A stretch of DNA of 64,000 nucleotides from Gekko japonicus (GCF_001447785.1 NW_015168654.1:2120031-2184030), one strand, 5' to 3'. Shown: positions 15,410-48,079, numbered from the stretch's first letter. The notes: generated by a model not told the origin, from the letters alone. Made by a program: numbers and translations.

Positions 15410-18400
15410 TTAGGGCATACTGCTATCAGGGCCAGGTCCCCCTTCATCTGCCAGGACCTGCCCATGCACCTTTTGGTGGCGCTTATAGTTGTCCCAGTGG
15501 CCGGTGGTGTAGGGGCAGATGCGGCACTGGAAGGGCTTCTCACCGGTGTGTCTCAGCATGTGGCGTTTGAGGTTCATGCTCTGATTGCAGGAGTAGGAGC
15601 AGAGGCGGCAGCGGAAGGGCTTGTCCCCCGAGTGGATGCGGCCGTGGCGCTTGAGGTTGGCAAGGTTGCCGCAGGCGTAGGGGCACAGCGGGCACTTGTA
15701 GGGTTTCTCGCCAGTGTGCACCCGCTGATGGCGCTTGAGGTTGTCCAGGTGGGCCGAGGCATACGGGCAGAGGGCGCAGGTGAAAGGTTTCTCACCGCTG
15801 TGGGTCTTCATGTGCCGTGCCAGGTGGTTGGGATAGGTTGTAACAAAGGAACACAGCTGGCACGAGAAGCCTTTAGGAGAGGCAGGCTCAGTCCCCAGCA
15901 CTGTCAGGCTGCAGCGCCCACACACGGGCTCGCCCAGGCCCTCGTCAGCCTCCAGAACCAGACCACAGGCCCTACAGGTGAACGGGAATAGCAGCTCGGG
16001 AAGAACAGTGGCAGAGTCCTCGGACCGCAGGAAGGGGGAGCCAGGCAGCAACGGTTCTGCGAAAGAAAAAAAAAGTGAGCAAGTTTGCTGGCCTTCCCAA
16101 GTTCCCTGTGCAGGTCTCCTTTGGTGAAGGCACCACATCACTTCTTACAGCCCAGCCCCAAGCCTGTGCTGTGAAGCCCTTGAGAACCAAGATATCTAAA
16201 ACTGGACAAGAAGCACAGATCAGCAGCAAGAGCAAGTTAGAGTTCAGTTTATCTGCGGGAAAGGTTGGAGTTCCTGGTTGCGAACTCCACTGGCCCACTA
16301 AAGCTGCAGCTAATTTCTGTCATACAACAAGATGACACGTCCCCGCTCCAAGGAGTTTTACAGGCTAAAATTTAAGATGGGGAGCTGTATTATGTCGACT
16401 GCAAGGCAGGAATCTTATGACAGTTTGAATGCACTTTGTTCCAGCATAAGCTTTTGTCATGTACAGGCCACTAACCCGTACACTCTTGTATATGCTCACT
16501 GTGCAGTCATTTTATGGAGAAGTACTTTAAAAAGATCAGGGAAGGGATGCAGACTCAAGAAAAGTGTATTCAGGCTACGTTTCAGCAGGGCAGGGAAACA
16601 GCCAGGTTGGAGATTCAGTCTCAAATGACGGTACACAACCTTTCCCCTAGAATTGGAGAATCATGAAAGCTTCAACCTGGGAGGGGGGTAGCTTTTGCTA
16701 TGTCAAGGGTATTGCCAAGACTTGCTCCTCTGCATCCCAGGCCCCCTAAGAAATGCCCCTTGCCCTGACTGGTACCTGGCTCCTGGTCAGCTACAGGTGG
16801 TCCCTCCAATTCTGGCTCTGATTCCCCTTGGAGCTGCTGGCTGTGGTCCTGGAAAGAGTTGCCATGGATGCAGCGGCAGTTGCAGGGGCCGCTTTGTGGC
16901 AGCCGTTCCTGGCCATGGACTCGCTGGTGCCTCTTGAGGTTGCCAAGGCTGCTGCAAGCAAAGGGGCAAGTGGGGCAGCGGTATGGCTTCTCGCCGGTGT
17001 GGGTGCGCAGGTGGCGTGTCAGGTTGACCAGCTGGGCTGAGGCGTAGGAGCAGTGCGGGCAGCGGTAAGGCTTTTCACCGTTGTGAGTCTTCATGTGCCG
17101 TTTGAGGTGGCTGGAGTAGTGTGAAGTGAAGGAGCACAGCTGGCAGGAGAAGACCACGCGCCCCTTTGGGGAGCCTTCCTCGTCCCCCTCGGGGCAAGGG
17201 CGGCAGTGGGCGGAGCCGGGAGCAGGCAGGCCACAGTGGTGACAGGCCAGGTCTGGGCCACCAGTTTCTCTGTCCTCCTGGGTCTGGCACAGAGGTGCGA
17301 ACTCCTCCTCGCTCAGTGTGTAGGCCGGCAGCCCAGGAGTCCCCCCAAGGGAGTCTGCAGCACACAAGGAGGGGGCATCAGGTAGGCAGCTGTGGGGATC
17401 CTCACCTTGGCCTCTCCCTTTCCTGCTGGTACAATAGGGGGTTACCGGGTGGGGGACCTAAGCTGCAGGAACCCTTACCACCCCCAGGCTTCCCTGCTCT
17501 GCTGCTCCCCCAGAAGGGATGCCTGACCTGGTGGCCCTCACTTTTGTCTAGAAGCTCTGGAGTCTTGTCCAACAGCTGCAACCAACCTGCATGCTCCCTA
17601 CAGAACACTCCACAACTCTCTCCTTCCCCACCACCTCCCCCCTCACTACAAATCTGCACCCCACAGCAATCATAAGGGACAGAGAAGAAAAAGCTCACTG
17701 TTTGGTTTTGACACTCCTGGCTCCAAACTCAGCTAAGCAAGAACCGAGGACACCCGCAATGCCACTGACCCAAGCCAGCGGCCCAATGCAAAGAAGGCGC
17801 TACCAGCTTACTAGCCTAGGGCTACCCGGGGACCCACCGGACCACAACCTCCCATCCCACCGAACCAACCTTCTGAGTCCTTCTCGAAGGCCAGGATCTG
17901 GTCGCCGCTCTCCTCCAGCTCCAGCTCCTCCTCTAGGAGGAAGTTACCCTGCGGCGCCAGGCTGTCTCCCGGGGGCTCAGCGGGAACTCCGACGGCATCC
18001 ACTGCAACAGAGGGAAGCCGCTTCAGAGAAGGGCTCGGCAAGCACCGCAAACCGGACTGGGTTCACCTGTGTACCACCGCGCGCGTGTGTGGGGGAGTGG
18101 GGAGCATCCCAGGCGGAACCCCAAGCCCGATCTCCACCCCCTCCCCCGCCGCGGCACTTTGAGGGGAAAGTAGGGTTTCTAGCCCTCACGAGCGCCTGAC
18201 CAGAGAATCGCAGAGCGACGGCTCGGGCCGGAGACGGCAGGAGGAGAATTGTAGGGAGGGAGCAGCCCGAACTCCCTCCGGTTGAGGGAATCGGCCTCGA
18301 AGCCTGGAGGAAGAAGACACCACCAGCAGCCCCTCGGTGAATAGAAGGAGAAGGGCCGGGCCTGCCTCACCTTTGACTGGCTGCGGGTTACGCTGCTTCC

Positions 18401-23251: not shown

Positions 23252-26200
23252 ATGAAGCGGCCCAAGGTGGGACCTCCCTCCCTTGGCATCCTGGGCCTTT
23301 TTGGACGGAAACCCAAAGTGACTTTGGAGCAGGATGGGAAGCTAGAATCCCCTCTGGGCAACCCTGAAGAGACCCACATCTCTCTGGTGCCAGAAGGGGA
23401 GGAGGAGGAGGAGGAAGATGAAGGCTTGCTAGAATGCCCACTGTGCCTGCTGCCCCAGCCTCCAGAGGCCTTCCCTGCACTCTCCTGCTGTTCCCACCTG
23501 TCCTGCCTCACCTGCTTGCAGCAATACTTGCGCATCGAGATCAGCGAGAGCCGCGTCCAGGTGGCCTGCCCACACTGCCCTGCTCTCCTCCAGCCCTCCG
23601 AGATCCACCAGCTGCTTCCCGAGGCCAACCTGTGCGAGAAGTATGAGGAATATCTGCTGCGGCGCCTCCTGGTGGCTGACCCAGGCACACGCTGGTGCCC
23701 TGCTCCGGATTGCAGGTGGGGCAGGGGTGACCTTTGGGGGAAGTGGAACTCATGTGGAGTTTTCCTGTAAACCAGGTCTGACCTGTCCACCAGGAAAGGG
23801 AGTGTGCCCTTTGGGCCACGGAAGACATGCCTATCCCATCATTCAGGGCTGCCATGGGCTGGATCCAGACTAAGCTTTCCACTAATAGAAGGAGAGGTGT
23901 AATTTCCATCGATTCCCCACCTCCTGCCGCAGACCCCATATGGGGTTTTTGAGAGCCCCCTTATCCCCTAGGAGCAGCACTTTGGGGAGATTAATGGGTG
24001 GCAGTGAGAGGCAGGATGAGGCAAGGAAGTTCCCTTTGGCTGATGGAAGTGCCTTCCGTTTAGTCTGGGTCTAGCCCTCGGTTTGTGCCAGCTGGCCGGA
24101 TGAAGCTCCAGAAGACTCTTGTAGTTGTCTAAACACTTTGTGTGTTACTGCCCAGAAAGGAGGGGGTCCCGGTGGTTTCTTTCATCCTTGATAAGCCTCT
24201 TTATATAACGGAAGAGGATGTAATTATGGCCATAGGCATAGACAGCTTTAAAAGGGGATTAGACAGATTCATGGAGGAGAGGTCTAATCAGTGGCTACCA
24301 CCCATGGTGGCTAAAGGGAACCTCCACATTCAGAGACCTCTGAACCCCAGAGCCAGGAGGCAAGATCAGGGGAAGGCCTCGGCCTCTATGCCCTGTATCT
24401 GGCCCTCCAGAGTAACTGGTCGGCCACTGTGTGAGACTGGGTGCTGGACTAGATGGACCACTGGTCTGATCCAGCAGGGCTGTTCTTATGTTCTTAAGGC
24501 AAGCAGAGAAGTGCTGCAGGGGTGGCCCAGGCACTCATTGGAGACCCTGTTTGGTCCCCATTTGGAAGGGCAGGATCAGATGCTTGCCAGGTTCGGTCCT
24601 CAGCTTTTCCATTCTTAAAAAACCTCAAGCAACACAATTAAGAATGACCTTTCTCTGCCTAAGAACATAAGAAGAGCCCTGCTGGATCAGACCAGTGGTC
24701 ATCTAGTCCAGCATCCTGCCTCACACAGTGGCCAGCCAGTTCATCTGGAGGGCCAACAACAGGGCATAGAGGCCAAGGCCTTCCCTTGATGCCTCCTGGG
24801 TCTGGGATTCAGAGTTTTAGTGCCTCTGAATGTGTAGGTTCCTCTTTGTCACCATGGCTAGTAGCCACTGATAGACCTGCCCGCCATTAATCTAATCCTC
24901 TTTTAAAGCTGTCTATTCCTGTGGCCATTACTGCATCCTCTGGCAGCGAATTCCACATTTTAATCACTCTGTGTATAAAGAAGTATCTTCTTTTGTCCAT
25001 CCTGAATCTACTGCCCATCAGCTTCATTTGATGCCCTCAAGTTCTAGTCTTTTGGGAGAGGGAGAGAAATTTCTCTTTATCAATTCTCTTCACCCCATGC
25101 CTGAATTTGGGGCAAGTGATGCTCTGTATTCTTGGTGCTTGAGGGGGGGGAGCAACAGTGGGAGGGCTTCTACTGTCTTGGCCCCCCTGGTGGTTCTCCT
25201 GATGGCACCAGGTATTTTTGGCCACTGTGTGACAGAGTGTTGGACTGGATGGGCCATTGGCCAGATCCAACATTGGCTTCTCTTATGTTCTTATGAATCC
25301 CTGGAGAGTTCCTGTCAGTCAGAGAAGGCAGTGCGGAGCTGGATGGACCAATTACCCAGTGCAGTGTCCTGCGGTTCCTAAGTGCCCCTGTGTGTGCAGT
25401 GTGAGATCTCAGTTAGGGAAGGCAAAGCAGAAGGTTCTGCTGTGAGGGAGGGAGAGGGTGTGGGGACATCCTCTCCAGTAGAAGCTCTGGAGCAGATGGA
25501 AGCTGGGGTACCTGAAGGATTTTCAGGAGACTGGGGTGAATGTTGAGCCACGATAGCTGCTGGACAAAATTACCTCTGGCCCTCTGACCTTCAGACCACA
25601 ATTTGGGCCCTTGTCACATTCAGAAGGTTTGACAAGACGTTCCATGATGCTATCTGCCAGTGGCATCTGGCTTGGCTCTGACATGTAGGCAGAGGGAGAG
25701 GCCGCATTCTTGCTCACCACAGTTGCAGGAACAGGGAATAACACATCTTATCATGAACACCTGAAGTCGCCTTAGACTGAATTACACTCCTGGTCTATCA
25801 AAGTCAATATTGTCTGTTCAGACAGGTAGGGGCTCTCTAGGGTCTCAGGCAGAGGTCTCTCACATCACCTGCTGCCTGGTTCTTTTTCTTTTTTTAACTG
25901 GAGGTGCTGAGGGTGGAACCTGGGGCCTTCTCTGTGTCAAGCAGATGTTCTACCACTGAGCAGCAACCTCTCCCCATTATTGCTTCAGTTACTATGTGGG
26001 CTTCTTAATGCTTGTGTAAGAGAGGAGGAGGAGGAGATTGGATTTATACCCCACCCTTCACTACCAGAAGGAGTCTCAGAGCAGCTTACAACCTCCTTTC
26101 CCTTCCCCACAACAGACACCCTGTGAGGTAGGTAGGGCTGAGAGAGCTCTCTCGAGAACTGCCCTTGAGAAAACAGAGATGGTTTCACAGACCTCCCTCT

Positions 26201-29200
26201 CTCATCTTTCTGGGATTCCAGAGAGGACATACGAAATGCCTAAATATAATCTAAATTGAATTCCTCCTGATTGTTTTGCCCTGACTTACCTTCTGTTTTA
26301 AAGCATGAGCTCAGGTTGCAGGCAAGAGCCACTGCCCCGAACTGAGGAGCTTCTCTTTGGGCCCTGAGAGCACCCAGCTCCTCTGACCGCTCCTTAAATT
26401 CCATCTCGAACCTCCTGGCAAAATATCACAAGTACTTGTGTGTTTTGTGAATCCAACAGAAGCACTGACAGTTAGGCACAGAGGATAAAAAATCGTAAAT
26501 GCAGCATATCCACAATGGTGGTGGAAAGTTCTGCCAAGTCGCAGCTAACTTATGGTGACCCTGTAGAGATTTCAAGGTGAGAGACCTTCAGAGGTGGTTT
26601 GCCATTGCCTGGCTCTGCGTCATCATGACCCTAGACTTCCTGGATGGTCTCCTATCCAAATACTAACCAGGTCCAACCCTGCTTCGCTTCTGAGATCTGA
26701 GGAGATCAGGGTAGCTGGGCCATCTAGGTCAGAGCATACCCACAATACTAGGGGCTAGATCCTATCTAGCACAATTAAGACCATAGGAAAAGCCAATGTT
26801 GGATCAGGCCTACGGCCCATCCAGTCCAACACTCTGTCACACAGTGGCCAAAAATACCAGGTGCCATCAGGAGGTCCAGCAGTGGGGCCAGGACATTAGA
26901 AGCCCTCCCACTGTTGCCCCCCTCCCCCAAGCACCAAGAAAGAGAGCGTTTCTTGCCCCAGACTGAGAGTTCCTATCTATAACTTGTGGCTAATAGACAC
27001 TGATGGACCTCTGTTCCATATGTTTATCCAATTCCCTCTTGAAGCCGTCCATGCTTGTAGCCACCACCACCTCCTGTGGCAGTGAATTCCATGTGTTAAT
27101 CACAATTGGAGGTGTGCTAGATCAAGGAGTTTTCTGCCTCCCTTTCCCTGCAGTAACTGGCTGTGCCCCCCAGCTCAAAATTGGACCCTCAGGGATCAGT
27201 GAAGCTCCAGGAACAGTGTGTATTTGTCTGTGGGGGGAGGAGTGGGAGTTCGCAGAGGGTATGATGGGAGAAATTATCCATAACCTGCTTGTCCAGATGA
27301 AAGCATTTTCTGTAAGCAGCCAGGGCCGGCCCCAGTTTACTTTGCACCCTAGGCGAGGATCCCTTTTGGCGCCACCCCTCCCCCCCCGGGCGCCCACCAA
27401 TTTTCAAAAATAAATGCATTTTAGGAAGAATGAAAAACACAAATAATCAAGGAACTCCCAGAGTACGGGGCCGGGTGCAGTTTGGCGCCCCTAAGGGCCA
27501 GCCCGCTCTAGGCAATCGCCTAGTGAGTGAGCCGGCCCTGTAAGCAGCAGAGGTTAGGATACAAGCCAGGAAGTTTGGCTTGAACTTCAGCATGCAGCCT
27601 GGGTTATATTATTTGAAGAGATACCAGGCAGAAGTTGCTTTGCTGGATTTCCCCAAGCTGGAGAGGAAAGCATGGATGTGACTGGTCAGTCCCTGTTCCT
27701 GCCCCCCCTCGACAAGTCAAAGCTTTAAACTTGGCTCTGTTTTAAAGACCCATGCATGTTGGGAATGGTTGAGGACTGAATTTCTGAGTAATCCCAGGCC
27801 AGTCTTTCCAGTAAATGTAACATCAGTTCAGGATGAGATGCTGTTTAAGCATCCCTAATTCTATGCTGGATTGTTGCCGTTTTAAGATTTAAACGATTTA
27901 ATACAGCAGAGTGGTAGGAGATGGCCATGGCTCAGTGGTAGAGCATCTGCCTGGTGTGTAGAAGGTCCAAGTTTCAGTCCCCGGCATCTCCAGTTAAAAG
28001 GATCTGGCAGTCGGTGATGTGAAAGATCTTTCTCTGCTTGAGACCCTGGAGAGCCACTGCCAGTTTTAGTAGACAATACTGACCCAGCTGAACCGATGAT
28101 CTGTTTCATTATAAGACAGCTTCATGTGTTCCCATGTGAAACCTGAGTGACATCGCCTCAGATTTTTAAAATACATTTTTATTCAAGTTTAATTTGAAAT
28201 TACAATGCTCGATAATAGATAACAAAACTACAAAGATTATACCTTTGACAGTATAACAGAAACTTCAACCATTACATCGTAAAACTGAAATGACAAGCAG
28301 TCTATTAGAATTGTTATTCTATTGCACTATTGAACTATAAGCAGCCATGGAGATAATATCAGTATAACCTCTACTTTTAAAAATTCGATTTCACAAAAGG
28401 AGCCCATTTCTTAACTATATAGGAATCATCGACCTGATCCAATCCTTGTATATCATCAGATAGTTTGTCCATAACAAAATAGTTCCATAATTTTGCATGC
28501 CACTTTTGAACCATAGGAGGGTTCTTATCTTTCCATTTTAAAGCTATTTTTTTGCTGCTGTGATCATTGTGGCGCTCGGGGTGGCGCTCGGGGAGGAGCT
28601 GTCCCAAAGACATCCACTAGTCTGTGGGGTGCCCCAAGGGGCAGTTCTCTCCCCGATGTTATTTAACATCTATATGCGCCCCCTTGCCCAGATTGTCTAG
28701 AGACATGGGCTAGGGTGTTATCAATATGCGGATGACACCCAGCTCTATCTGTTGCTAGGTGGTCAGTCTGGCTCTACCCCGGAAGATCTGGACTGAGCGT
28801 TGCGGGACGTAGCGGGCTGGCTTAGGCTGAGCCGACTGAAATTGAATCCGACGAAGACGGAGGTCCTAAGCCTGAATCAGAGTGGCTCGGGGCTAGGGGT
28901 CCCTCTTCCGGCCTTCGGTGGGGCGCCATTGGTGCCAGCGCCGAGGGTCAGGAGCTTGGGAGTGCTCCTGGATGCTTCCCTGACAATGGAGGCCCAGATA
29001 GCAGCCACTGCCAAGGCAGCCTTTTACCACCTTCGGCTGATTAGGCAGTTGGTCTCCTTCCTCGAACGCAACGATCTGGCATCAGTGATCCATGCTATGG
29101 TCACCTCGAGGTTGGAGTACTGTAATGCTTTCTACATGGGCCTGCCCTTGGGGCAACTCCGGAAGCTGCAGCTGGTGCAGAATGCTGCGGCCAGGTTGCT

Positions 29201-32200
29201 GATGGGTCTCCCCATGAGGGAGCACATCCAACCTGTGCTGAAGTCGCTGCACTGGCTGCCAATAGCGTTCCGGATACGCTTCAAGGTGCTGTTTTTGACC
29301 TTTAAAGCCCTTAATGGTCTGGGGCCTGTGTACCTGAGGGACCGCCTTTCCCCATATGTTCCCCCGAGAGCACTGAGATCCGGGACACAAAACCGCCTGG
29401 TCCCCCCTGGCCCTAGGGATGCTAAGTTAACAGCAACAAGAACCAGGGCATTCTCCCTAGCTGCACCAAAGCTATGGAACGAGCTCTGCGGGATCTTCAA
29501 CAATTCCGTAGAGTGGTTGAAGAACAAGCTGTTCCGACAAGCGTTCTAAGAGCCCTGGCCACACTGGCCGCTCCACATGAGCACTAGCACTTTATACGGA
29601 TGGCCGCCAAATCTCAAATCTCAATAGGTTGTACTTATTGCAATGTTTTATGGTTTTATGGTATGGTATTGTATTAGTTGTGATAACTGGTTTTAATTGT
29701 ATATTGGTATTAATTATTTGTAAGCCGCCCTGAGCCGCCTTGGTGGGAGGGCAGGGTAAAAGTTTGATAAATAAATAAATAAATTGTCAGTGTTAAATCC
29801 TTCTTGATTTTAGAAATTTCAAAGTTGTCCCAGAGGTTCAGACATCCTCTCAGATAATGGACTTGGGACATGCTAGTCCAAAGAGTTGCTTGTCACTGGC
29901 CAGCAGCGTCTGACGTCTGACCTGCATAGGACCTGAGTCCGTTCCCCAGCTCAGGCCAGCTGCAAAAAGGACCCTTAAGGATTATTGGTTGTTTGTGCTG
30001 CAGTAGCCTAACATGGCTGCTCTCCCAGAACTCATCCACCTTGCCCAGCACTCCTGATATTAGATTATAGGAGCTCTTCTCTGTAAAAGAAGCTCTAAGC
30101 ATAGGGAAGAGCAGGGAAGGTAGAAGAGCATGAAATATTGTAGAGAGAAGCAAACAAGGCTTGCTTGGGGACCAGACCCCGCTGGAGGATCTGATGCTGC
30201 CCAGAAATACATCAATGCTCAGTCCGGGAGCTGCTCCCCCATGTGAAGGATTCTTGCCTGGTGACGACCAGGGCTGCGACTTTCAGCCACTCTGGGATCC
30301 AAACATGCTGGGCAGTAGATCACACCTGAAGTGACACACAGGAGGCCAGAGCTCCCCTGCATTCAAGCTCAGACTCTCAAGACCTAAGAGCAAATTTCTT
30401 ATGCGTGGACAGTAATTTCTGACCCCCTGGAACAGCAATTCTGGAGGCTCAGCGGGCTGCAGCAGGAGGGGGGAATTAGCAGAATTTGCTACCCCCTCTT
30501 ATTTTTTTGTCATTTTATTTCTGAAAATTTCAAAATACAAACATAAATATTGACAGAACAATTGAAATTTCAAAGGAGTACTATAGATTCCAGCTGCAGG
30601 ATATGCTACACAATAAGAAGCACAGTAACAAGATAACTTAATTTTTAGCAGGTTTGCCTGAACCTCTTGCTTCTAAGCAGGGGTCATTTTGTAGAAAAAG
30701 AGGTGCAGGAGCTCATTAGCATAACTCATTAGCATAACTTATTTGCATATGCCACACCTGACATCACCGGAAGTGTGTCAGAAGGCAACACCCACCGCTC
30801 AGGCTCCACTGGACTGTTTTGGATTGCTAGCAATTGGGGGAGGGGGGAACGTGCAGATCTGTCCCTCACAGAGGAGGGAGAGCTTGTACCTGAATAAAAC
30901 CTGGTCTTAAAGGTGCCACTGGACTGTTTTGGACTGGGGGGCCGGGGGGGGGCTCTGCAGCTTACCTGGCTGCTTCTTGCTCTGACTGAGGGCTGCTGGG
31001 AGCAGGGGGTGGGGCTTGTTGCATGTGCCTGCCCCCTGTGCTCTTTACTGCCGGAGCGCCGCTCCTGTGTGCTCCTGCAGGAAATGACCCCTGCTTCTAA
31101 GTAAACAACTGTTACTAAAGATAAGCCAGAAGATTATAATAATGGTGATTCTGAAAGGATTTTTTACTGCGAGCATTCTGTGCCATTGATTCTAATACCG
31201 GAAGGCATCGATCAGAAAGATTAGTGTGACCTGTTTGTTGTTCCGATTGTGAAATATGTTTGGAGATTTTATCCATGAGATAATGGTCCCAAATTCTATT
31301 GTACCACTAACTAATTGTTGGAGGATCTTTGTGTTTCCATTTGGATACTATTAACCTTTTTGCAGCTGATAAAAACAGTGCAGTGAGATCCCTACGTACA
31401 GCTGGGATAGTTCATCTTGCCAATGATTTGATAAAATTAATTCTGATTCCTCTAAAATCAGGTACCCTGTGATTAAATTGACCTGGGCCAATATTCTATG
31501 CCAAAACTTTCTCATAACAGTACAGTACCACCAGGAGACAATTCTTCCGCATAGCTTCCAACACATGGGTGAAAGTTTCATCTTAAGAGGATGAAAACGC
31601 CCTTAAGTCTTTGGGACCGCTTGGACAGCTACAAACCTTTCCTCTCACCATTGCAGGGAGGGCGGGGCATAAATTGAATAAAATAAAATAAAAATAAAAA
31701 TCCCCAAAGGAGATCACAGTCTTTCCTTAATCTCCACCATATCCACAGGGCCTATAAAACGGAGCTGTTCTGCCAGGCCTTTGGTTGAGGTGGCAGATGT
31801 TTTTACCATCTCGGCCTCCCCTGCCCATAGTGGGCCTACAGATGCCTACTATCCTACTAACACCCAACAAGAAGTGTATTAGGCTGCTCTGGACTGCTGT
31901 TATTTTGTGTTGCTGCCATCCTGTTTTTATTAACTGGCTTCAATTGTATATTTAATGTTCTATCACTGTTGTGAGCCACCCTGAGCCCATCGTGGGATAG
32001 GGCGGGACATAAATGCAATAATAAATAAATATTGCGGAGGGTCTGGAACCCAGTCTCTCCCTGTGATCAGTCAGTACTTGAGTCTAGCAAAGAGGGAGAT
32101 CCACTGTCATCTTCTTGGGGAAGCAAAGGCGCTTGCAGTGAACTGGGGGGGGGGGGGATGCATGCAGAGAGTTGACCTGGGAGTGGATGCACTGCTCCTA

Positions 32201-35200
32201 AGCTTACACCTTTCCTCTTGGTCTCTCCCCTTAGCTATGCAGTCATTGCCTACGGCTGTGCTGAATGTCCCCGGCTCGTCTGTGGCCGCCAGGACTGCAG
32301 GACGGAGTTCTGCTACCACTGCCGGCAGCCCTGGCACCCCAGCTCTTCCTGTGAGCAGGCCTGGCGGGAATGGAGCCGGCAAGCTCCAGGGGCAGTGGAG
32401 CTGTCCACCCAGCTGATCCAGAAGGAGGAAGCTTCCAGGCGTGAGTCTGGCCAAAAGGGTATCGTATGTGCCTCTGTTCTCCCAGCACTGGATTGCTCCA
32501 GTGGCATCCCTTCCTCCTTGGTTGGGCTGTCCCTTCTCGCTAGGATTTGGAGAGGAGACCAGCACTTCTGTCACCAAGCTTGGTTCCCCAAATGGGGCAC
32601 TACAGTTCCTTATCTGCTAGTGGCCCACTGCCAGGGGTCCCTCCAAGGCTCTGCTCCACCGCTTGAGAACTAACTATTCTTTCCCTTGTCTTTCCTCTGT
32701 CTCACCAGCAGACACAGAAACCATCAAGGTGTGTCCCCGCTGCGGTGCCTTCATCATGAAGATCAATGACGGGAGCTGCAATCGCATGAATTGCACCGTC
32801 TGTGGATGCCTGTTCTGCTGGCTGTGCTTGCGAGAGATCACGGACGTGCACTTCCTCAGGTGGTAGTGTGCTGTGGGAGGTGGGGGGGAGGCAGATTGGT
32901 GCAGCGGTCAAGGGGACCGCTGGGAGTAAAGGGAAACTGGACCTTTACATTTGGTCCTCCTTCCCAGGTCCCTTTGTGAAATAGAAGCTTAGGCAGCTTA
33001 AGATCTGTCCTGATGCAGCACATAAAACCTGCATCAAGCGTCATGTCTATTAGTCTTCCAGAGGAACTGGTTGGCCACAGCGTGAGACAGGATGCTGGAC
33101 TAGATGGACCAGTGGTCTGACCCAGCAGGTCGTTAATTCGATTTATTAGGATGTTAAAGCATCATTTATTTATATTTGTTTTCATAGCTCAACTTGCATG
33201 CTGTTTTTCTCCTGCAGAAGGCTGCCAAAATGGCTTTTAGCAGACTCTGTAACAACTGGACAATAATCAGTCACTACACAGTTCTTAAAACAGTAGTGTA
33301 AAAATTAACTGCAGCTGCAGGAATGTAAAATTCAGTGAACTTGATTATCACAAAATGTCTGGTGAAGTTTGCCTAAAATGGCAACAGAGTAGGCCTGATG
33401 GATCTCTTTTGGAAGGGTGTTCCAGAGTATTATGGGGTGGGGGCAGGAGCAGTGCTGACTTTAGTTGGGCCTGAGACTCTATACAATCAGGGAGAAGAGT
33501 AGAATTGGCTGTTAACCACACAAGGTGAGGGTCTGATTAAACACAGTGGAAGTCATGGATGTCTCATTATCTTAAAAGTAAATGCCAGGGGCGTGCGACC
33601 CAGTTCAGGCCATTTGGGGAGGGGAGAGGGGGTTTAATCCTCCCAGTTCTGCACGGTTTGGCCTATCAAAACCATAAGAACATAAGAACATAAGAGACGC
33701 AAATGTTGGATCAGGCCAAAGGCCCATCCAGTCCAACACTCTGTGTCACACAGTGGCCAGAAATACCAGGTGCCATCAGGAGGTCCATCAGTGGGGCCAG
33801 GACATTAGAAGCCCTCCCACTGTTGACCCACCCCCCAAGCACCAAGAAGACAGCATCACTTGCCCCAGAGCCCCTAGCTATACCTTGTGGCTAATAGCCA
33901 CTGATGGACCTCTGCTCCATATGCTTATCTAATTCCCTTTTGAAGCCATCCAAACCACCTTCCCTGTGCTGTTATGAGCCCTAGAGGGGAGGGGGGGGGA
34001 GATATCTATAATTGTCCATAATTCTCCCAAAGTATGAGTATATTTGTATGGGTGGGGTGGGATGGGGAGGAGTTTTCAAAGACAAAATCATGCAAATGTG
34101 GAAAAGCAGAGACACCCTCTTCCACCCTGTGTAGCTCTGATCTGGACTGGGATCGCATGCACCTGCATGTTTTGCAAATGCTAAGGCCAGATCACAATTC
34201 TCTCATCATGTTGCTAATGTGGACCCTAAAAACCCCAAGGTTCTGACCTTTGTGGCTACAAAGCCGGCATCAGCATATACCCTGAGGTGGGTTGTCTGCC
34301 AGGGCCCAGAGCTTCTGCCAAAGCCAACTGCCCTTGACCACCACACCCACACCTCCTCTGCCACCTGCCTCCACACCGTTCTCTTGCCTGCTTGCAAACA
34401 CTCCAGCTCCTATGCTCCTGGCCGCCCAGCACTGCAAGGGAAGAGTGTGCTGGTGGTGCAGACGGTGCTCTGGACAGTTTGTAGCATTTGCACTCCCAGC
34501 CACATGCCTCATGCCGTGCAGGAAAGGGCACGTAGGTGGCTGCGGGCGCAGGTAATGGGGAAGGGTCAAGAGTAGCCACGGGAAGGGTGCACAGGCAAGT
34601 GGGGGATACATGGGGAGGGGCAGGAAGGGAAATGTGAGTGGGGATCTTGGTGGTGGGCAAAGGATGGGAGGGGGCATCCCCTGAGCACTTTCTACCCAAG
34701 GCCCTTCAAAACCTAGAAGCAGCCTAGGCCTAGTGACATTTTTCAAACTGCAGGTAAGACCTCCAGCCTCCCTGGCATTCTCACTTCCACTATTGACCCC
34801 CCAGCTGTAAGAACATAAGAGAAACCATGTTGGATCAGGCCAATGGCCCATCCAGTCCAACATTCTTTGTCACACAGTGGCCAAAAACAAGGTGCCACCA
34901 GGAGGTCCACCTGTGGGGCCGGAAGCCCTCCCACTGTGGCCCCCCCAAGCACCAAGAATACAGAGCATCACTGCCCCATAGTGTTCCATCCATACCTTGT
35001 GGCTAATAGCTACAGATGGACCTCTGCTCCATATGCTTATCCAACCCCCACTTGAAGGTGTCTGTGCTTGTAGCCACCACCACTTCCTGCAGCAGGGAAT
35101 TCCACACGTCAACTACTCTTTGGGTGAAGAAGTTCTTCCTTTTACCTGTCCTAAGCTTACTGCTCAGCAATTTCATTGAGTGCCCACGAGTTATTGTATT

Positions 35201-38200
35201 GTGAGAAAGAGAGAAAAGTACTTCTTTCTCTACCTTCTCTGTCCCATTCATCATTCTGTAAACCTCTATCATGTCACCCGTCTTCTCCCCAGTCCTTCTG
35301 GATGCACCTTTTGGGGGAAGAAGCCCTGGTCCCGGACACGCAAGCTTCTCTGGCAGCTAGGCATGGTACTGGGAGCGCCCATGGTGATCTCTCTCGTTGC
35401 TGGCATTGCTGTGCCGGTCATCACCCTAGGGATACCCATCTACATGGGGAAAAAGGTAAGGCATTTCACTCCTCCACCCCCAATAGCAGGAACTCCTCAA
35501 GAGCATTGCTGCAATGCTCTTCCAGGCCTAGTGGTGGAAGCAACACTTAGGGGTTCTCTCGACTTAGCATTCCCTTTCCAAGCCTCAATACCTTCCCTCC
35601 CTCAAGGTTCTGAGCCACGGACGCAAGAGCAAACTGTCGGTCTGCCAGCAGTGTCTGTCTGTGTCCAGCAGTATTCTTCTGTCCCTCTTTGTGTCACCTG
35701 TAATCACTGCAGTCACTGTAGGTAAGAGTCAAAAAGGTATCTCGGGGGTTGGAAGAGGGTCCTGGATTCACAGAGATGTCCGTTGCATCGCCAATGAACA
35801 GCAAAGGATATCACCTTACTGCCCTTTTGGCAGTGCTGTGTCTGCTAGGCTGACACACACACAGCCTGCTGTCACCCAAAGGGGAGGGTCTCCAAATTAT
35901 TTGGGGGAATTTAGCTCTTAAAGGAGGCCTTTTGCTTAGCAAGAGGGGGTAACAGTGAGACTTCTCCACCAGCTTTTATGGTGATTTTTCCCTTAGAGAA
36001 CCTCTCAGAAATAAACGAGGCTGTTGCTTAACCAAGAAAGGCTGCTTTATTGAGAGAGGAAATTCTAATAAGATCATGCACACATACAGAAACAAATGCA
36101 TACTGGAAAACACACAGGGTACTAGGAAAAATAGAAGGGAGCAGAAATGTAGGAGGGTTCGGGGTGAAGATCAGAGGTCCGTGGAGAAGAGGCTGTGAAG
36201 ATGAAAAGGAACCCAAACGAATTTGGGGGTGAACTGTCACCTTGGGAAGAGTCAGGTCTCATACGAGGCTCTCTGCTCACAGGGGTCGGGGTGCCGCTGA
36301 TGCTCACCTATGTGTATGGAGTGGTGGCGCTCTCTCTGTGCCGGAATCGCTGGGGGTGTGGTGGCACCCGGAGAAAAGCTGGGGAGCTCAGCATGGTGGA
36401 ACTGGAGAACCTTGCCAAATGTACGTGAGTCACTGAAGCAGGTTGAGAAAGGGAAGCCCAAACGTCTGGGGGATGAAGCAGTGGACGCATCACTATCCTT
36501 GGCACGTCACAGTCTCTCTGTTCACCTCCTAAGCTACCTTGAGTGAAACAATCTGTTCTAACTTTGGTGTGAGATGCGAATTTTATTTATTTATTCATTC
36601 ATTCGTTTTTATTTATTTATTTACATTATTTGTGACCTACCTGTCTCACTGGGACTCCAGGAGGATTACACAGGTGTGGGTGAAAGGGAACAACCTTGGC
36701 CAGGGCCAGTGTCAGCATCCCTTGAGGTGGGACGCCTGCCAGGGCCTACTGCTGCCAGCACCCTCTGCCTACTTGCTTGCTAGTGGTCTACTATTCATGA
36801 TCCCTGCTGCATGCACTGCCCGATGCCACTGGGGAAAGGGCTGCAGGCAGTTGTGAGCGTGGGCAGTGGGAGTGTATGTGTGCAGACAAGGGAAGGGGAC
36901 ACACAGACACACAAGCAGATGGGAGTCATGCATGTGGGTGGCAATGGAAGGAGGGCACAAGTGCCTGGTGATGGGCAGAGAAGGAGTGCCTGTGAATTGT
37001 CTGCCCAGTGCCCCCCCCCCCTGGAACCAGCCCTGATCTTGACAAGTTCTCTCCATAATGAAACTGAACAGCCTCCGACCATCAAGATTTTGCCTGTAGG
37101 TTTTGACAGCTCTGTACTGNNNNNNNNNNNNNNNNNNNNNNNNNNNNNNNNNNNNNNNNNNNNNNNNNACCTATTGCAGGCCTTTTCAGCTCTGAAGAAA
37201 GTCATCCTCTGTTGGACTTTCCAATGTTTTGTCAGCTTGATATAAGATGAATTGGTTTTCTAAGGTACCTTGAAGTTTCATATGTGGAATGGAACAAGTC
37301 GGAGCATGCAAAATGTAAATGAGCAATAGAATAATGGGTAGTCCAGTCTTAACAGTTTTGCTAACAGGGAGTCCACTACACTAACACAAGGTTAGAAAAT
37401 GTCTGGCCACGCAGGTGGGTTCAGTTCTGTAGCTGTGATGTTTACAAAGGTTTAGATTCTGTGGTTCTGTTCTGCTAATAGTGGAGTTCTCTGTCAGCAC
37501 AAGGAGACATGGGTTGGATCCAGTGGTCTGCAGGTTCCTCCTCACTGCAGTCCTTTCTTACCTGGGACACTTGATTCCCAGGTTCATGGGATCCATACAG
37601 ACAAACAGCCTTGCTTCAGAATGCAGGAGTGGTGAGGGAAAAGGGGACAGAATTTCCCTCTTCTGTGCTGATGGAAGAGGCAAAAAGGGAGAGTTTTGTC
37701 CCTTACCTTGTTCCCATTGAAGGCTCCCACTGTGGGTAGTACAAATCAAGTTTCTAGGATGGGAAGGGACTGCTGGCGATGGGGAGGAGACAATTTGAGA
37801 AAGATCCACAGCTGTTACAGCTTTCCGTTGGCAGATTGCTGGATCCAGCCCTATGCCTTTTCTGCCATCAACAGTGAAATAGAGTAATAGGACCCAGCCC
37901 TGTATGTGTTATTCTTGTAGCGTTAGTACTGCATGCAGGCATAGAGTGCTAACACAAGAATAACACTCACATGGAATTGAAAGCAGTCGTGTAGTGTCTT
38001 ACTGATTATGATGTCACCTTTAGACAATTCTCTTTGCAATCATGTCCATAAGACTGCTCTACAGGGAGACAACCCTATGGATAAGAGCCCCTTTTGCTCC
38101 TGTGCAATGACAAAAAAATGAATCTGTTGGTCGATTGGTGAGCAGAATTTGAAGACATACAGAAAACTCGATTCTAGCCTGGAAACCCTGACCTAGTTAG

Positions 38201-40125
38201 ACCTATCAGCAGTTCTTGTACTTACAGTAATCAGTCTGTTCTTTGGAATTGTCTAGAAACCCCTCACAACATGAAATTGTTTTTCTTCAGTCTCTCTTCT
38301 GGCTTCTCACTGCATTTTTCAAGTTGTTTCACCATCCCACCCCCCAGCTAGTGGGGTAGATCCAACCAATGTTTCAGCCTATCTTACTCAATTCCCCTTC
38401 TCACTACAGTTCCTGTCCCCACATGGCTTTTCTCTATGCAGCTCTCATGACCCCCCCCCCATAACATTTTTGGGTGGTTAGAGGGGACCCTTCTTCTTTT
38501 TATCCACCCCAGTATTTCCCATTTTCCTTCTTTTCTGCTTCCCTTCCATGTGAACAAACACACTGTTAATGTTCCTACTATTTCTTTTTCATTGTCCCCA
38601 CATATAATATTTTTCTAACTATGGTTACACAGGCAAAAGCTGTTTCTGGGTGTTATATCGACTGAAACATGATCCCAGCATTCTTGTGCCCTAGAGTGGA
38701 GGACTTTAATCTGGAGAACCGGGTTTGATTCCGTACTCCTCCGCCTGAAGCCCGCTGGTTGACCTTGAGTCAGTCACAGTTCTCTCAGAGCTCTCTCAGC
38801 CCCGCCTACCTCACAAGGTGCCTGTTGTGGGGAGAGGAAGATAAGCCACCTTGAGACTCCTTAGTGTGGAGAAAAGCAGGGGGGGTGTTATGAAAACCAA
38901 CTCTTCTCCTTTTCCCCCTCAGGATGTTCTTCTCAAAAGCACCTTACTGCCATTTTTCCCACAGGGGAACGTCTTTGCCCACTGAATAGATATATGTTCA
39001 GCGGTGGTTTCCCCCCCCCTAAAAATTTTTGAGCAAAAAACCTTAATCGGCTTTGAATACTCCCCTAACCAACCAAACAACCCTCTCCTGATAAAGCAGA
39101 TTGCTTCATCCAAGGAGAAACATGAAGCTGCCTTCCACTGAGTCAGAACATTGGTCTGCCTTGGCCAATGTTGTCTACTCCGACTGGTGGCAGCTCTCCA
39201 AGGTCTCAAGTTGTGGTCTTTCACAGCACCTACTTCCCTAATCCTTTCAGCTGAAGATCCCAGCAGGGACTGAACCTGGGACCTTCTGCGTGCCAAGCAG
39301 ATGCCCTCCCCGATGCTTATTTTATTTTATTAGACTAGCATCCCGCCCTCCCCGCAAGCAGGCTCATAACTACTCTACTGTTGCATAAATGCCCTTTCTT
39401 CTCTCTCTGCCTGTTCCAGTGAATGAGCTGCTGTCTGTGCTGCCTACTCCAAGGGCTGCTGAAGTTGGGGGTCTGCCTGCTGCGATGGCGGCTGCCTCAT
39501 TACGTAGCGCTGGTCATAGCCAACATGAGGAGCCGCCACGAAAGCAGCAACACAGCCAGTCCGCCAGCACCGTAGCCCTGGCTGGCAGCATGCTGAGCGA
39601 AGGCCAGGAAACGTCTTACAGGTCAGTGTGCTGGGGAGGGGCAGGGGAGGGCCCAGGCAAAACCTGGCCAGAGGTTGCAGGAAACAAGAAGGGGATATGT
39701 TGCACAGCATCTGGCTATAGTCCTCCACTGTTGCATGGGTAGAACTTGGTGGCTCTGAAGGTACCCCCTGATTTCAAAGCAGGCTCGATGGGAGGAGAGG
39801 TCTTGGGTTCACTCAGGGGCTCAAGGGCCACCTTCTCCTCCACTCCACAAGCCAGTGGGGTCCTACTACCTAAGGCAGAAGGCCACCTACCGATTCTGAA
39901 GTAGGATTCCAAGCACCCCGTGGCGGCTGCAGGCGGGCTCGCCAGCCACTCTTGTTCTCTATCCTTCTCAGGGATGGGCTGAACTTCGAGGTGGAGGTGG
40001 AAGTGGAGCCCCAGGCTTCCTCGGAGCGCAGCCTCTGCAGCGCAGCCTCAGGCCACAGCTTCTCCATGGACTCTCTTGCCTGCACCAGCGACGGCTGCAG
40101 CTTGGCAGGAGCAGTAACAGAATAA
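23252..40125 (+). CDS. RNF19-family RBR (RING1-IBR-RING2) E3 ubiquitin ligase with C-terminal membrane segments, ~530 aa; divergent RNF19A/RNF19B paralog. Exons: 23252-23715, 32235-32440, 32709-32859, 35293-35455, 35607-35721, 36283-36420, 39420-39621, 39972-40125
   Basis: RING1 [36 protein letters not shown]; [31 protein letters not shown]; RING2 [32 protein letters not shown]; RNF19 signature [15 protein letters not shown]; two hydrophobic stretches. All introns GT-AG, phases give an uninterrupted 1593-nt ORF. Confidence 0.92.
24210..25295. mobile_element. Cluster of CR1 LINE 3' fragments in alternating orientation (~24210-24495 +, ~24662-25110 -, ~25110-25295 +)
   Basis: [14 protein letters not shown] motif and (TTCTTATG)n / AAGAACATAAG tails. 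Confidence 0.75.
26515..26735 (-). mobile_element. 5S rRNA-derived SINE (5S-Sauria-like)
   Basis: Reverse complement contains 5S-like GATCTCAGAAGCGAAGCAGGG..CTGGTTAGTATTTGGATAGGAGACC followed by GGCAATGGCAAACCACCTCTG; sister copy ~44370-44530 (+). Confidence 0.7.
27321..27540. mobile_element. hAT-type MITE, 8-bp TSD TAAGCAGC
   Basis: TIR CAGGGCCGGC / GCCGGCCCTG; perfect TSD. Confidence 0.88.
27920..28132 (+). mobile_element. tRNA-derived SINE, near full length
   Basis: Head GGCTCAGTGGTAGAGCATCTGC with B-box-like sequence, tail CAGCTTCATGTGTTC; about 10 copies in the window (865, 8495, 10480, 25760, 39120, 45425, 51930, 60135, 61345). Confidence 0.8.
28170..28560 (-). mobile_element. L1-like LINE ORF2 C-terminal / 3' fragment
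   Basis: [23 protein letters not shown] peptide and A-rich 3' end on the minus strand; family assignment by resemblance only. Confidence 0.5.
28561..29783 (+). mobile_element. L2-clade LINE, 5'-truncated RT and 3' end
   Basis: [49 protein letters not shown]; (TAAA)n tail; in-frame stop near 28795. Confidence 0.9.
30678..31093. mobile_element. hAT-type MITE, 8-bp TSD CTTCTAAG, carrying a Penelope-like fragment
   Basis: TIR CAGGGGTCATTT / AAATGACCCCTG; perfect TSD. Confidence 0.85.
34810..35280 (-). mobile_element. CR1 LINE 3' fragment abutting the acceptor of an RNF19-like exon
   Basis: [34 protein letters not shown] and AAGAACATAAG tail. Confidence 0.85.
37120..37168. other. Assembly gap (N run) in an intron of the RNF19-like gene
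   Basis: Run of n. Confidence 0.99.
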
Positions 40126-46100: not shown

Positions 46101-48044
46101 CTCCTCTGGAGGCAGGTTTTTATTGCGTTTGTAGAAGTGATCTCCTGTAAGAGGGAAGCATGGGAGAGATGCGTCGGAGGGGCTCCCTGCCCTTGAAAGC
46201 ACTTCTCTGGGGGCGGGCTGCGCCACACAGATGAAGACAGACACAGCATCAAGGCACCCCTGCCTCACCCCTAATGAACCTGACGCATCAGATATATTGT
46301 CGAGCATTTCCATATGGCACAACCAAACACCAAACAGAACAGCAGAAATTCACTGTCGTAGTGGCCACCGGCTTACATGCTTCAAAAGGGGTGTGTGACA
46401 ATCTCAGTTTTAGCAATAATGATCACATGGAGTCCTGAGTGAGAGGGGGAGGGCTTTCTCACAAGGCCAACTTGTTCCTTTGAATGCCAGCTGCTGGGCG
46501 GGGGAGTGGACACACAGCAAGGGAAGGCTGTGTCCTTCATGGCCTGCTTCTGGGCCGGATCCAGACTAAATTTCCCATTAACGGACGGGTTGGTCATCGT
46601 TCCACCGGTTTTTCATCCTATTGCAGACCCCAAATATGCCCCCTCTTGCCATTCCTGAGGGTCCGCTATCCCCCCAAAGAGCAGCAGTTCAGGGAGGACA
46701 GTGGGCTGTAGCAAGACACTTCTGTTCCGCGAATGGAAGTGCCACCCGTGAGTGGAAAGTCAGTCTGGATCAGACCACCTGTGCTTTCAGCTTCACTAAC
46801 CGCAGCTGGAAACAGAGTTCTGGCCTCAATAAACTTCAGTCTGCTCGGAAAGGCCTTCCCTCCCACCCCACCCCCAGTTCCCCCTTGACACCGCATCTTC
46901 TCGCCCCACTAACGTGCTGCCCCTTGCACAGTCCCAGGTCAGGACAGGATGGATGGAAGGATGACTGGCTGGCTGGCTGGCAGCTGGAGGGCTGCATGAG
47001 AGAAACGAAGGCCACGGTTAGAGACGGGAGTGCAGGCTACTGCAGCCCTGGAGCCTCAGCACACTCACCGATGGCCCGGGAGAGGTTGAGGCCGCCGTTG
47101 ACCCGGCCGTCCATGGTCACTTTCCCACCGGCGTTCTTTATTCTGGCCAGCTCAACCTCGTCTTCGGGCTTGTGGTCGTAGGACATGTCAACCGCCTTGC
47201 CGGCTTCCGACACCACGCAGCGAGAGTCCCCGGCGTTGGCCACGATGAGCTGTTTGCCCCGGATGAGGGCGACCACCGCTGTTGTGCCACTTTCTGAGCC
47301 GGGCTGGAGACCAAGAAGAACATTAGATGCTTCCCGCATACCAGAGGGGAGGCTGGCGGAAAGGATGCTTCCGAGGGCAGGGCCACGAGCAGACAGCTGT
47401 CCCAACCCCCGCCCTGTGCTCCCATCTGCCCTGTTTGCCAAGCCGCACTTCACCTTGAGCCAGCCAGGCAGAGCTGCCTCGGCTGAGATCGTAGCTTCTC
47501 TCGGCAACTAGGACAGAATCCCCCACCCCCCCAGCTCCAGGACTGACCTTCTCCTTTCCCTCCATGCCTGCAAGCATCATGTCCTCATCTTCATCCTCTT
47601 CCGCTTCTTCTGTGTCATCCTCGTCCTCCTCAATGTCTCCTTCCTCGCTGCTGTAGCCATCTTCATCCTCCTCAATGTGTCCTTCCTCGCTGCTGTAGCC
47701 ATCTTCATCCTCACTGCATTCCTAGCAGAGACAAGAACACCCCAGTCCCCCCCCACCCCCAAAAACAATCAGACTGGCCGGAAACAATGGCAGGTCCTGA
47801 GTGAGATGGGGAGGGCTTTCTCACAAGGCCAATCGGGTCTCCTCCAGCCTAGAAAACAGCCAGGCCAAGTGGAGGGCAACAGAAAGCCCTGGAGGTAGTG
47901 AGATGGCTGTTTTGGCAAGCCAACTAGAACCACCCACTTGTCCGCAAAGCGGCCGGACTACCAAAGCTCCCTTTCCCAACTCATCTATGGAAGACAGAGA
48001 TCCCTTCCCTTGACCAGCTGAAGCCAGAGGTTACCTCGCTGTCA

Positions 48045-48079
<35 letters not shown>

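What the first reader, a model, noticed from the sequence alone, without database searches (positions are those of the whole stretch)
23252..40125. Extra RNF19-family RBR E3 ligase between ZNF513 and PPM1G: candidate third RNF19 ohnolog absent from mammals
Seen: an intact 8-exon ORF (~530 aa) with RING1, IBR, RING2, the RNF19 motif [15 protein letters not shown] and two membrane segments, with no stop or frameshift. Known (from recall): human 2p23.3 runs SNX17-ZNF513-PPM1G-NRBP1 with no RBR gene; RNF19A lies near SNX31 (the SNX17 paralog) on 8q22 and RNF19B on 1p35, both in the 1p/2p/8q paralogon. Intron positions and the 163- and 115-nt exons match my recollection of RNF19A, so it is not a retrocopy. 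Inference: a whole-genome-duplication paralog ('RNF19C') kept in this reptile and lost in mammals, probably uncharacterised.
Basis: partly seen in the sequence, partly recalled or inferred. Interest (0 to 1): 0.9.

Follow-up and report, generated by a model that had tools for sequence, protein, structure and literature searches.

The report
Third RNF19 ubiquitin ligase gene, non-mammalian
This gecko carries an intact, expressed gene for a third member of the RNF19 family of membrane-bound ubiquitin ligases, an ancient copy kept by many fishes, amphibians, reptiles and birds, not found in mammals, never named or studied, and with two catalytic helper residues changed.

Summary
Window 23252-40125 (+) holds an 8-exon, all GT-AG, 1593-nt ORF of 530 aa. 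It encodes RING1-IBR-RING2, the [15 protein letters not shown] motif and two long membrane helices. It lies between a ZNF513-like gene and PPM1G.

The N gap (37120-37168) lies inside intron 6. RNA-seq reads and a spliced transcript contig join 36420 to 39420 in frame, so the gap does not touch the coding sequence. Junctions E3-E4 to E7-E8 are all seen in RNA.

In a careful ML tree this protein falls in a third clade ("C", 100/100), separate from RNF19A and RNF19B. The clade holds squamates, birds, alligator, salamander, caecilians, lungfish, coelacanth and ray-finned fishes. An origin inside RNF19B after sharks split off is rejected (AU p=0.003). Single species carry A, B and C. No mammal, turtle or frog appeared among the 120 best hits. 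A 2R whole-genome-duplication origin is plausible but was not tested.

Two points were not in this finding's text. The genes are already in databases, auto-named "RNF19A-like" or "RNF19B-like", but no searched paper describes them. The clade evolves 10-20 times faster than A and B.

The parts
23252..23715 (+). Exon 1: start codon (conserved MKRPK), acidic N-terminus, RING1 (C62..C109, C3HC4), start of IBR
32235..32440 (+). Exon 2: IBR (BRcat) and linker
32709..32859 (+). Exon 3: RING2 (Rcat)
   Evidence: the 3' end is joined to E4 in 5 RNA reads
32777..32779 (+). Codon of catalytic Cys247 (invariant in A, B, C and outgroups)
32783..32785 (+). Codon of Arg249, in place of the catalytic-triad His (ARIH1 His359, parkin His433)
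32810..32812 (+). Codon of Leu258, in place of the triad Glu (ARIH1 Glu370, parkin Glu444)
35293..35455 (+). Exon 4 (163 nt): [15 protein letters not shown] motif and membrane helix 1 (aa 292-326)
35607..35721 (+). Exon 5 (115 nt): loop and first half of membrane helix 2
36283..36420 (+). Exon 6: second half of membrane helix 2, conserved YVYGVV..SLCRN.W.C
37120..37168 (.). Assembly gap (N), inside intron 6; no effect on the coding sequence
39420..39621 (+). Exon 7: poorly conserved tail
39972..40125 (+). Exon 8: tail motif EVxVEIEP shared with RNF19A/B, Ser-rich end, stop TAA
40126..40400 (+). 3' UTR; the transcript contig runs on about 800 nt beyond 40400
   Evidence: X1 record 1
11228..13418 (+). 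Context: SNX17 exons (FERM lobes)
15410..17367 (-). Context: C2H2 zinc-finger gene in the ZNF513 position
   Evidence: the name comes from position and recall
47037..48583 (-). Context: PP2C phosphatase with an acidic insert (PPM1G-like)

Best explanation
The locus is a working gene for a third vertebrate RNF19-type RBR E3 ubiquitin ligase, here called 'RNF19C'. It separated from the RNF19B line before sharks and bony vertebrates diverged. It has been kept in ray-finned fishes, coelacanth, lungfish, salamanders, caecilians, crocodilians, birds and squamates, and it appears to be missing in mammals. Shown here: gene structure, splicing, expression, domain content, clade membership and constraint on the core. 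Inferred mechanism: the protein sits in a membrane through two long helices, with the N-terminal RBR module and the short C-terminal tail in the cytosol. RING1 would bind a ubiquitin-charged E2. Ubiquitin would pass to Cys247 of RING2 as a thioester and then to a substrate. The usual helper residues are replaced (His to Arg249; Glu to Leu258 in lobe-finned lineages, Gln in ray-finned fishes). The last step, acyl transfer, is therefore probably catalysed differently, as proposed for RNF216, which also has Arg at that place. The tail after the membrane helices is only about 140 aa, against about 400 in RNF19A, so the substrate range is probably different.
For: The ORF is intact with GT-AG introns. 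Junctions 35455/35607, 35721/36283, 36420/39420 and 39621/39972 are seen in raw RNA-seq of the same species. A spliced contig shows 0 mismatches. X18 has no intron depth outside the repeats, and X17 and X19 only about 0-3. E3-E4 is supported by loose ends. Clade C is 100/100, its inner branching follows the species tree, and B+C is 99/94. C nested in bony-vertebrate B is rejected at p-AU 0.0026. A, B and C coexist in Paroedura, Rhineura and Rhinatrema. All Zn-ligand Cys/His and Cys247 are kept in 27/27 members. Against the Paroedura ortholog there are 3 changes in the 343 core residues and 21 in the 187 tail residues, Fisher p=1e-7. Foldseek finds only RBR ligases at the top. The roles of His433 and His887 and the Arg in RNF216 come from PMC8767196; the triad comes from PMC3940038.
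Against: No enzymatic data exist. Loss of both triad partners could mean a weak or inactive ligase. The RING2 part of the model has only moderate confidence (pLDDT about 56-61). The clade sits on a long stem (about 0.88 in the careful tree; 0.74 in the quick tree) and evolves 10-22 times faster than A and B. Its sister position to B may therefore be pulled by branch length; the alternatives are only marginally rejected (p-AU 0.044 and 0.037). No shark or lamprey member was seen, although the tree implies that one once existed. Absence in mammals rests on a list cut at 120 hits.
Confidence: 0.85

Rival explanations
1. The third paralog is ancient but arose by a local or segmental duplication, not by the vertebrate 2R whole-genome duplications.
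For: No synteny test could be run. The tree only dates the split to before the shark/bony-vertebrate divergence. Only three of four possible ohnologs are seen.
Against: C lies beside SNX17. In human, RNF19A shares an 8q22 amplicon with SNX31, the SNX17 paralog (PMC3617176; adjacency from recall). NRBP1 and NRBP2 lie on 2p23 and 8q24 (recall). The timing fits 2R.
Confidence: 0.25
2. The protein is a catalytically weakened or dead 'pseudo-ligase'. It would be kept for a non-enzymatic role, for example binding E2~Ub, trapping ubiquitin on Cys247, or regulating RNF19A/B in the membrane.
For: Both triad partners are replaced in all 27 members. In HOIP and parkin, mutating the His blocks or slows acyl transfer but not thioester formation (PMC8767196). 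Evolution is fast.
Against: The catalytic Cys and every Zn ligand are invariant across a clade that spans ray-finned and lobe-finned vertebrates. RNF216 (Arg) and RNF144A/B (Gln) lack the His and are active. HOIP has Gln at the Glu place (PMC3940038).
Confidence: 0.15
3. It is a recent lineage-specific duplicate or a translocated ortholog of RNF19A or RNF19B.
For: Database names say 'RNF19A-like' or 'RNF19B-like'.
Against: Clades A, B and C are separate with full support. The AU test rejects nesting in B. The same species hold all three. Clade C spans fishes to birds.
Confidence: 0.02
4. In this gecko the gene is a transcribed relic on its way to being lost.
For: The tail diverges fast. The RNA depth seen was low, a few reads per exon in the 3-12% of each run that was sampled.
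Against: There is no stop, frameshift or broken splice site. Residues 223-403 show no change against Paroedura. The one coding SNP seen in the reads is synonymous (35720 A>T).
Confidence: 0.03

Closest known systems
RNF19B (NKLAM/IBRDC3)
   Same: Same architecture: N-terminal RING1-IBR-RING2, the [15 protein letters not shown] motif, two membrane helices, and the tail motif E.QVDIEP / EVxVEIEP. It is the sister clade in the tree (99/94).
   Different: A separate clade that split off before the shark/bony-vertebrate divergence. It reads CNRM and C-L/Q-FCW instead of CNHM and CEFCW. It is 530 aa against about 700-790. It evolves about 10 times faster.
RNF19A (Dorfin)
   Same: Same family and architecture. 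RNF19A lies near the SNX17 paralog SNX31 in human.
   Different: It falls outside the A clade. It lacks most of the long C-terminal extension that binds Dorfin substrates (PMC3940038). The triad His and Glu are replaced.
RNF216 (TRIAD3)
   Same: An active RBR ligase with Arg at the place of the catalytic His (PMC8767196). It is among the best structural matches.
   Different: A different RBR subfamily with no membrane helices. The resemblance is at one active-site position only.
HOIP / HOIL-1
   Same: RBRs with a non-canonical triad. HOIP has Gln at the Glu place, as the fish members of clade C do. HOIL-1 lacks the His and makes ester bonds.
   Different: They keep other specialised parts (LDD, NZF) that are absent here. 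No evidence links clade C to linear or ester-linked ubiquitin.

Membership tests
RBR E3 ubiquitin ligases | RING1 with the C3HC4 zinc ligands | tested here: met
   C62, C65, C80, H82, C85, C88, C106 and C109 are kept in 27/27 clade members. There are Pfam RING hits. pLDDT is 89-96.
RBR E3 ubiquitin ligases | IBR (BRcat) between the two RINGs | tested here: met
   Pfam IBR hits on the end of E1 and on E2. Cys/His ligands at 149-194 are invariant or nearly so.
RBR E3 ubiquitin ligases | RING2 (Rcat) with the catalytic cysteine | tested here: met
   E3 scores above the Pfam IBR threshold (30.2 against 24.3 bits). It aligns to the ARIH1/ARIH2 Rcat with Cys247 on the catalytic Cys. Cys247 is invariant.
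RBR E3 ubiquitin ligases | Catalytic-triad His two residues after the Cys, and Glu/Gln partner | tested here: not met
   Arg249 in 27/27. Leu258 in 15 (lobe-finned side) and Gln in 12 (ray-finned side). This feature is not universal: RNF216, RNF144A/B, RNF14 and HOIL-1 also lack the His.
RBR E3 ubiquitin ligases | Overall fold like solved RBRs | tested here: met
   Foldseek top hits are ARIH2, ARIH1, RNF216, HOIL-1, parkin and HOIP, E down to 5e-10. The model used the ortholog P0153. Whole-model pLDDT is only 57.8.
RBR E3 ubiquitin ligases | Thioester intermediate and ligase activity | not testable with these tools
   This needs biochemistry.
RNF19 (Dorfin) subfamily | RBR near the N-terminus, followed by [15 protein letters not shown] and two membrane helices | tested here: met
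RNF19 (Dorfin) subfamily | Falls inside the vertebrate RNF19 clade, apart from invertebrate RNF19 | tested here: met
   A+B+C against 7 invertebrate sequences: 100/99.
RNF19 (Dorfin) subfamily | Long C-terminal 'Dorfin' extension | tested here: inconclusive
   The tail is about 140 aa. Only the EVxVEIEP block and Ser-rich end align with A/B. The tail is disordered in the model.
RNF19A orthologs | Placement in the RNF19A clade | tested here: not met
   Clade A is 99/96 without it. A+C held together gives p-AU 0.037.
RNF19B orthologs | Placement in the RNF19B clade | tested here: not met
   Clade B is 100/99, sharks included, without it. Nesting inside bony-vertebrate B gives p-AU 0.0026.
2R ohnolog | Duplication older than the gnathostome radiation | tested here: met
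2R ohnolog | Paralogous neighbour genes around A, B and C (paralogon) | not testable with these tools
   Only this window's SNX17 neighbour was seen.

The most novel reading that the evidence does not exclude
Clade C is a naturally re-engineered RBR. With Arg249 and Leu/Gln258 in place of the His-Glu pair, it would transfer ubiquitin by a different chemistry or to a different acceptor than RNF19A/B. Examples are substrate-assisted or linkage-specific transfer as in RNF216, or non-lysine (ester) ubiquitination as in HOIL-1. It would do this at a membrane, giving non-mammalian vertebrates a ubiquitin signal that mammals lost.
Probability: 0.2. Interest if true: 0.7.

Novelty: new member of a known kind. 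Interest (0 to 1): 0.45.

Why it matters
Textbook lists give vertebrates two RNF19 ligases because they are drawn from human and mouse. This locus shows a third, ancient one that is kept in most non-mammalian bony vertebrates. In databases it hides under misleading names ('RNF19A-like', 'RNF19B-like', and sometimes plain 'RNF19A' or 'RNF19B'), and these names can corrupt orthology calls and expression studies in fish, birds and reptiles. The clade-wide replacement of the catalytic His and Glu, with the Cys kept, is a natural experiment on how RBR ligases carry out the acyl-transfer step. The practical gains are a proper name and a test system in zebrafish, medaka or chicken. It is not a new kind of system, and loss of an ohnolog in mammals is common.

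Tried and rejected
No synteny in other species, no ortholog coding DNA and no dN/dS could be obtained. As a substitute I used the spread of amino-acid changes against the Paroedura ortholog.
- The joined (spliced) protein was never sent to a search tool. Exons were searched one by one by reference. The joined translation was built only inside the sandbox from window coordinates for alignment and trees. The structure was predicted for the ortholog P0153 (96% identical) instead.
- Read laying allows one call of at most 6 kb, so junctions E1-E2 and E2-E3 were not tested.
- A contig of run X1 lies across the place of the N gap. Its letters were not used or reported.
- The first quick tree held three unstable rows: tunicate P0061, dragonet P0073 and 'Lampetra' P0495. 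They were left out of the careful tree.
- Pfam gave no hit on exons 4-8.
- The protein-atlas search named only generic RBR clusters.
- Full-text searches for 'RNF19C' and for 'RNF19A-like', 'RNF19B-like', 'rnf19al' and 'rnf19bl' found no paper on this gene. A search for RBR family phylogenies found none that treats it.
- The whole-model pLDDT is too low (57.8) to read active-site geometry.
- Rejected readings: retrocopy (7 introns), recent duplicate, pseudogene.
Full report
**1. What is in the sequence**

On the + strand eight blocks translate into an RNF19-like protein. Reading the splice sites by eye gives this model:
- E1 23252-23715
- E2 32235-32440
- E3 32709-32859
- E4 35293-35455
- E5 35607-35721
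- E6 36283-36420
- E7 39420-39621
- E8 39972-40125

I then checked the model against related proteins with tblastn. Every intron is GT..AG. The exons add up to 1593 nt, which is 530 codons and a TAA stop, with no internal stop.

Searched exon by exon by reference, E1-E3 give Pfam RING and IBR hits. E3 aligns to the catalytic RING2 (Rcat) of ARIH1, ARIH2, parkin and RNF216. E4 carries [15 protein letters not shown] and a 35-residue hydrophobic stretch, and E5 and E6 carry a second one. An AlphaFold model of the 96%-identical ortholog P0153 has a confident RING1, a moderate IBR and RING2, two long helices (288-335 and 340-389) and disordered ends. Its best structural matches are all RBR ligases.

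The joined protein of the window was not sent to any search tool. It was assembled only inside the sandbox from window coordinates, for alignment and trees.

**2. The assembly gap**

The Ns at 37120-37168 lie inside intron 6 (36421-39419). Raw RNA-seq reads of the same species join 36420 directly to 39420 with GT..AG ends. The read counts are 2 (X17), 4 (X18) and 11 (X19).

An 1851-nt contig of run X1 runs E4-E5-E6-E7-E8 and on into the 3' UTR without a single mismatch. The codon across the joint is T+TG = Leu413. The Paroedura ortholog has the same length and aligns without any indel. The gap therefore hides no exon and has no bearing on the frame. A contig lies across the place of the gap, and I did not use or report its letters.

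**3. Expression**

The same call shows junctions 35455/35607, 35721/36283 and 39621/39972. Five reads carry loose ends that equal window 32823-32852, the end of E3, which supports E3-E4. In X18 the introns have no depth outside the repeats; in X17 and X19 it is only about 0-3, near the exon level in X17. The exons have a few reads in the 3-12% of each run that was sampled.

One coding difference seen in the reads, 35720 A>T, is synonymous (GTA to GTT). Junctions E1-E2 and E2-E3 could not be tested, because only one call of at most 6 kb was allowed.

**4. Neighbours**

- Upstream on + are SNX17 FERM exons (Pfam; PDB SNX17 4gxb).
- Next come two C2H2 zinc-finger ORFs on the minus strand.
- Downstream on the minus strand is a PP2C phosphatase with an acidic insert.

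This is the order SNX17, ZNF513, [this gene], PPM1G. The name ZNF513 rests on position and recall. A human fine-mapping paper lists the annotated genes there as '...EIF2B4, SNX17, ZNF513, PPM1G, NRBP1, KRTCAP3...', with no gene between ZNF513 and PPM1G (PMC2570409).

**5. Relatives**

An exhaustive HMMER search with exon 1 found a set of 450-620-aa proteins that are closer than any RNF19A or RNF19B. A search with one of them (Rhineura, P0005) returned 120 clusters at 515 bits or more. They are named 'RNF19A-like', 'RNF19B-like', or sometimes plain RNF19A or RNF19B. They come from squamates, many birds, alligator, axolotl, caecilians, coelacanth, lungfish, bichir, sturgeons, gar and teleosts.

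The nearest is Paroedura picta P0153 (530 aa, 95.5% identical), so the window comes from a gecko. No mammal, turtle, tuatara, frog, shark or lamprey is in that list, although far more distant teleost orthologs are. The list is cut at 120, so this is good but not final evidence of absence.

True RNF19A and RNF19B sets were collected with two further searches. Paroedura has A (P0401), B (P0540) and the third gene (P0153). So do Rhineura (P0423, P0522, P0005) and Rhinatrema (P0393, P0511, P0180).

**6. Tree**

The careful tree has 62 rows and 533 columns, under LG+C20+F+G4 with ultrafast bootstrap and SH-aLRT support.

| Group | Support |
|---|---|
| Third clade (27 rows) | 100/100 |
| RNF19B (19 rows, with three cartilaginous fishes) | 100/99 |
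| RNF19A (9 rows) | 99/96 |
| Vertebrates against 7 invertebrate RNF19 | 100/99 |

Inside the third clade the branching follows the species tree: bichir, sturgeon, gar and teleosts on one side; coelacanth, lungfish, amphibians, alligator plus birds, and squamates on the other.

B and C group together (99/94). Holding A+B or A+C together costs about 7.7-7.8 log-likelihood units (p-AU 0.044 and 0.037), which is only a marginal rejection. Forcing C inside bony-vertebrate B, with shark B outside, is rejected (p-AU 0.0026). The copy is therefore older than the split of cartilaginous and bony vertebrates. This refutes a recent duplicate and fits the time of the 2R duplications.

Caveats:
- The stem of C is long (about 0.88 in the careful tree; 0.74 in the quick tree).
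- C evolves 10-22 times faster than A or B between the same species pairs.
- Fish RNF19A is represented by one sequence.
- Three unstable rows were left out (tunicate, dragonet P0073, 'Lampetra' P0495).

**7. Constraint**

dN/dS could not be computed because no ortholog DNA was available. Three substitutes point the same way:
- The ORF is intact in 27 sampled species across the clade.
- All zinc ligands and the catalytic Cys are invariant in 27/27 members.
- Against Paroedura, 24 residues differ. Three fall in the 343 core residues (61-403), none at all in 223-403, and 21 fall in the 187 residues of the two ends (Fisher p = 1e-7).

**8. The active site**

RNF19A, RNF19B and all outgroups read C-N-H-M...G-C-E-F-C-W. 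All 27 members of the third clade read C-N-R-M (one reads C-N-R-I), followed by Leu on the lobe-finned side and Gln on the ray-finned side. HMMER's alignment to ARIH1 puts Arg249 on His359 and Leu258 on Glu370.

These are the two partners of the Cys-His-Glu triad described for parkin, HHARI and HOIP (PMC3940038). In parkin and HOIP the His speeds acyl transfer to the acceptor amine, not the loading of the Cys. RNF216 has Arg and RNF144A/B have Gln at this place and are active. HOIL-1 lacks the His and makes ester bonds (PMC8767196). I found it independently and extended it to the whole clade and to the Glu position.

**9. How it most likely works**

Shown here: an expressed, constrained, membrane-anchored RBR protein with a complete zinc scaffold and a catalytic Cys.

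Inferred: the RBR module and the tail face the cytosol. RING1 takes a charged E2 (UBE2L3 or UBE2L6, as for Dorfin). Ubiquitin goes to Cys247 and then to substrates near the membrane. The last step is catalysed without the His-Glu pair, perhaps as in RNF216. The short tail keeps only the EVxVEIEP block shared with A and B, so the substrates probably differ. A catalytically weak or regulatory role is the main rival at about 15%.

**10. Origin**

A 2R ohnolog is the most economical reading, at about 65-70%. The split is old enough. C lies next to SNX17, while human RNF19A shares an 8q22 amplicon with SNX31 (PMC3617176; adjacency from recall). NRBP1 and NRBP2 lie on 2p23 and 8q24 (recall). No paralogon test could be run here, so an old local duplication remains open.

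**11. Novelty and verdict**

It is not new to databases, since hundreds of automatic models exist. It has no name of its own, and no paper in the searched library treats it. Loss of an ohnolog in mammals is common. The clade-wide change of the catalytic helpers is the more interesting part.

My class for it is a new member of a known kind, with moderate interest of 0.45.

Noticed in passing
P0495 (public protein, 'Lampetra planeri'): This 631-aa 'lamprey' product nests inside teleost RNF19B, next to a pipefish. It is probably fish contamination in that assembly, not a lamprey gene.
   Followed up: partly
P0073 (Synchiropus, dragonets): A 733-aa 'RNF19A-like' protein with CNHM kept sits on a very long branch (0.99) and could not be placed among A, B and C. 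It may be a divergent teleost copy or a fourth lineage.
   Followed up: no
P0402 (Platysternon megacephalum): A protein named 'isocitrate dehydrogenase' in the record is a full-length RNF19A, so it is misnamed.
   Followed up: no
window 38680-38853 and 39202-39375 (intron 6): Two short interspersed repeats show very high depth and many loose ends in all RNA runs. They are transcribed copies from elsewhere in the genome, not part of this gene's mRNA.
   Followed up: partly
window 5443-6164 (+), 19227-19661 (-), 28800-29549 (+): These are ORF fragments of retrotransposons. There is a weak reverse-transcriptase hit and the 'ELWCWRR' motif typical of BovB/RTE by recall. The 249-aa ORF in intron 1 has no Pfam hit.
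   Followed up: no
window 61349-61416 (+): One tRNA match above the Rfam threshold (41.5 bits). It may be a tRNA gene or a tRNA-derived repeat.
   Followed up: no
window 11422-11462 and 61721-61767: Two more assembly gaps. The first lies within the SNX17 gene region.
   Followed up: no
window 35720: A>T in the reads of two RNA runs, a synonymous change in a Val codon at the E5 end.
   Followed up: yes
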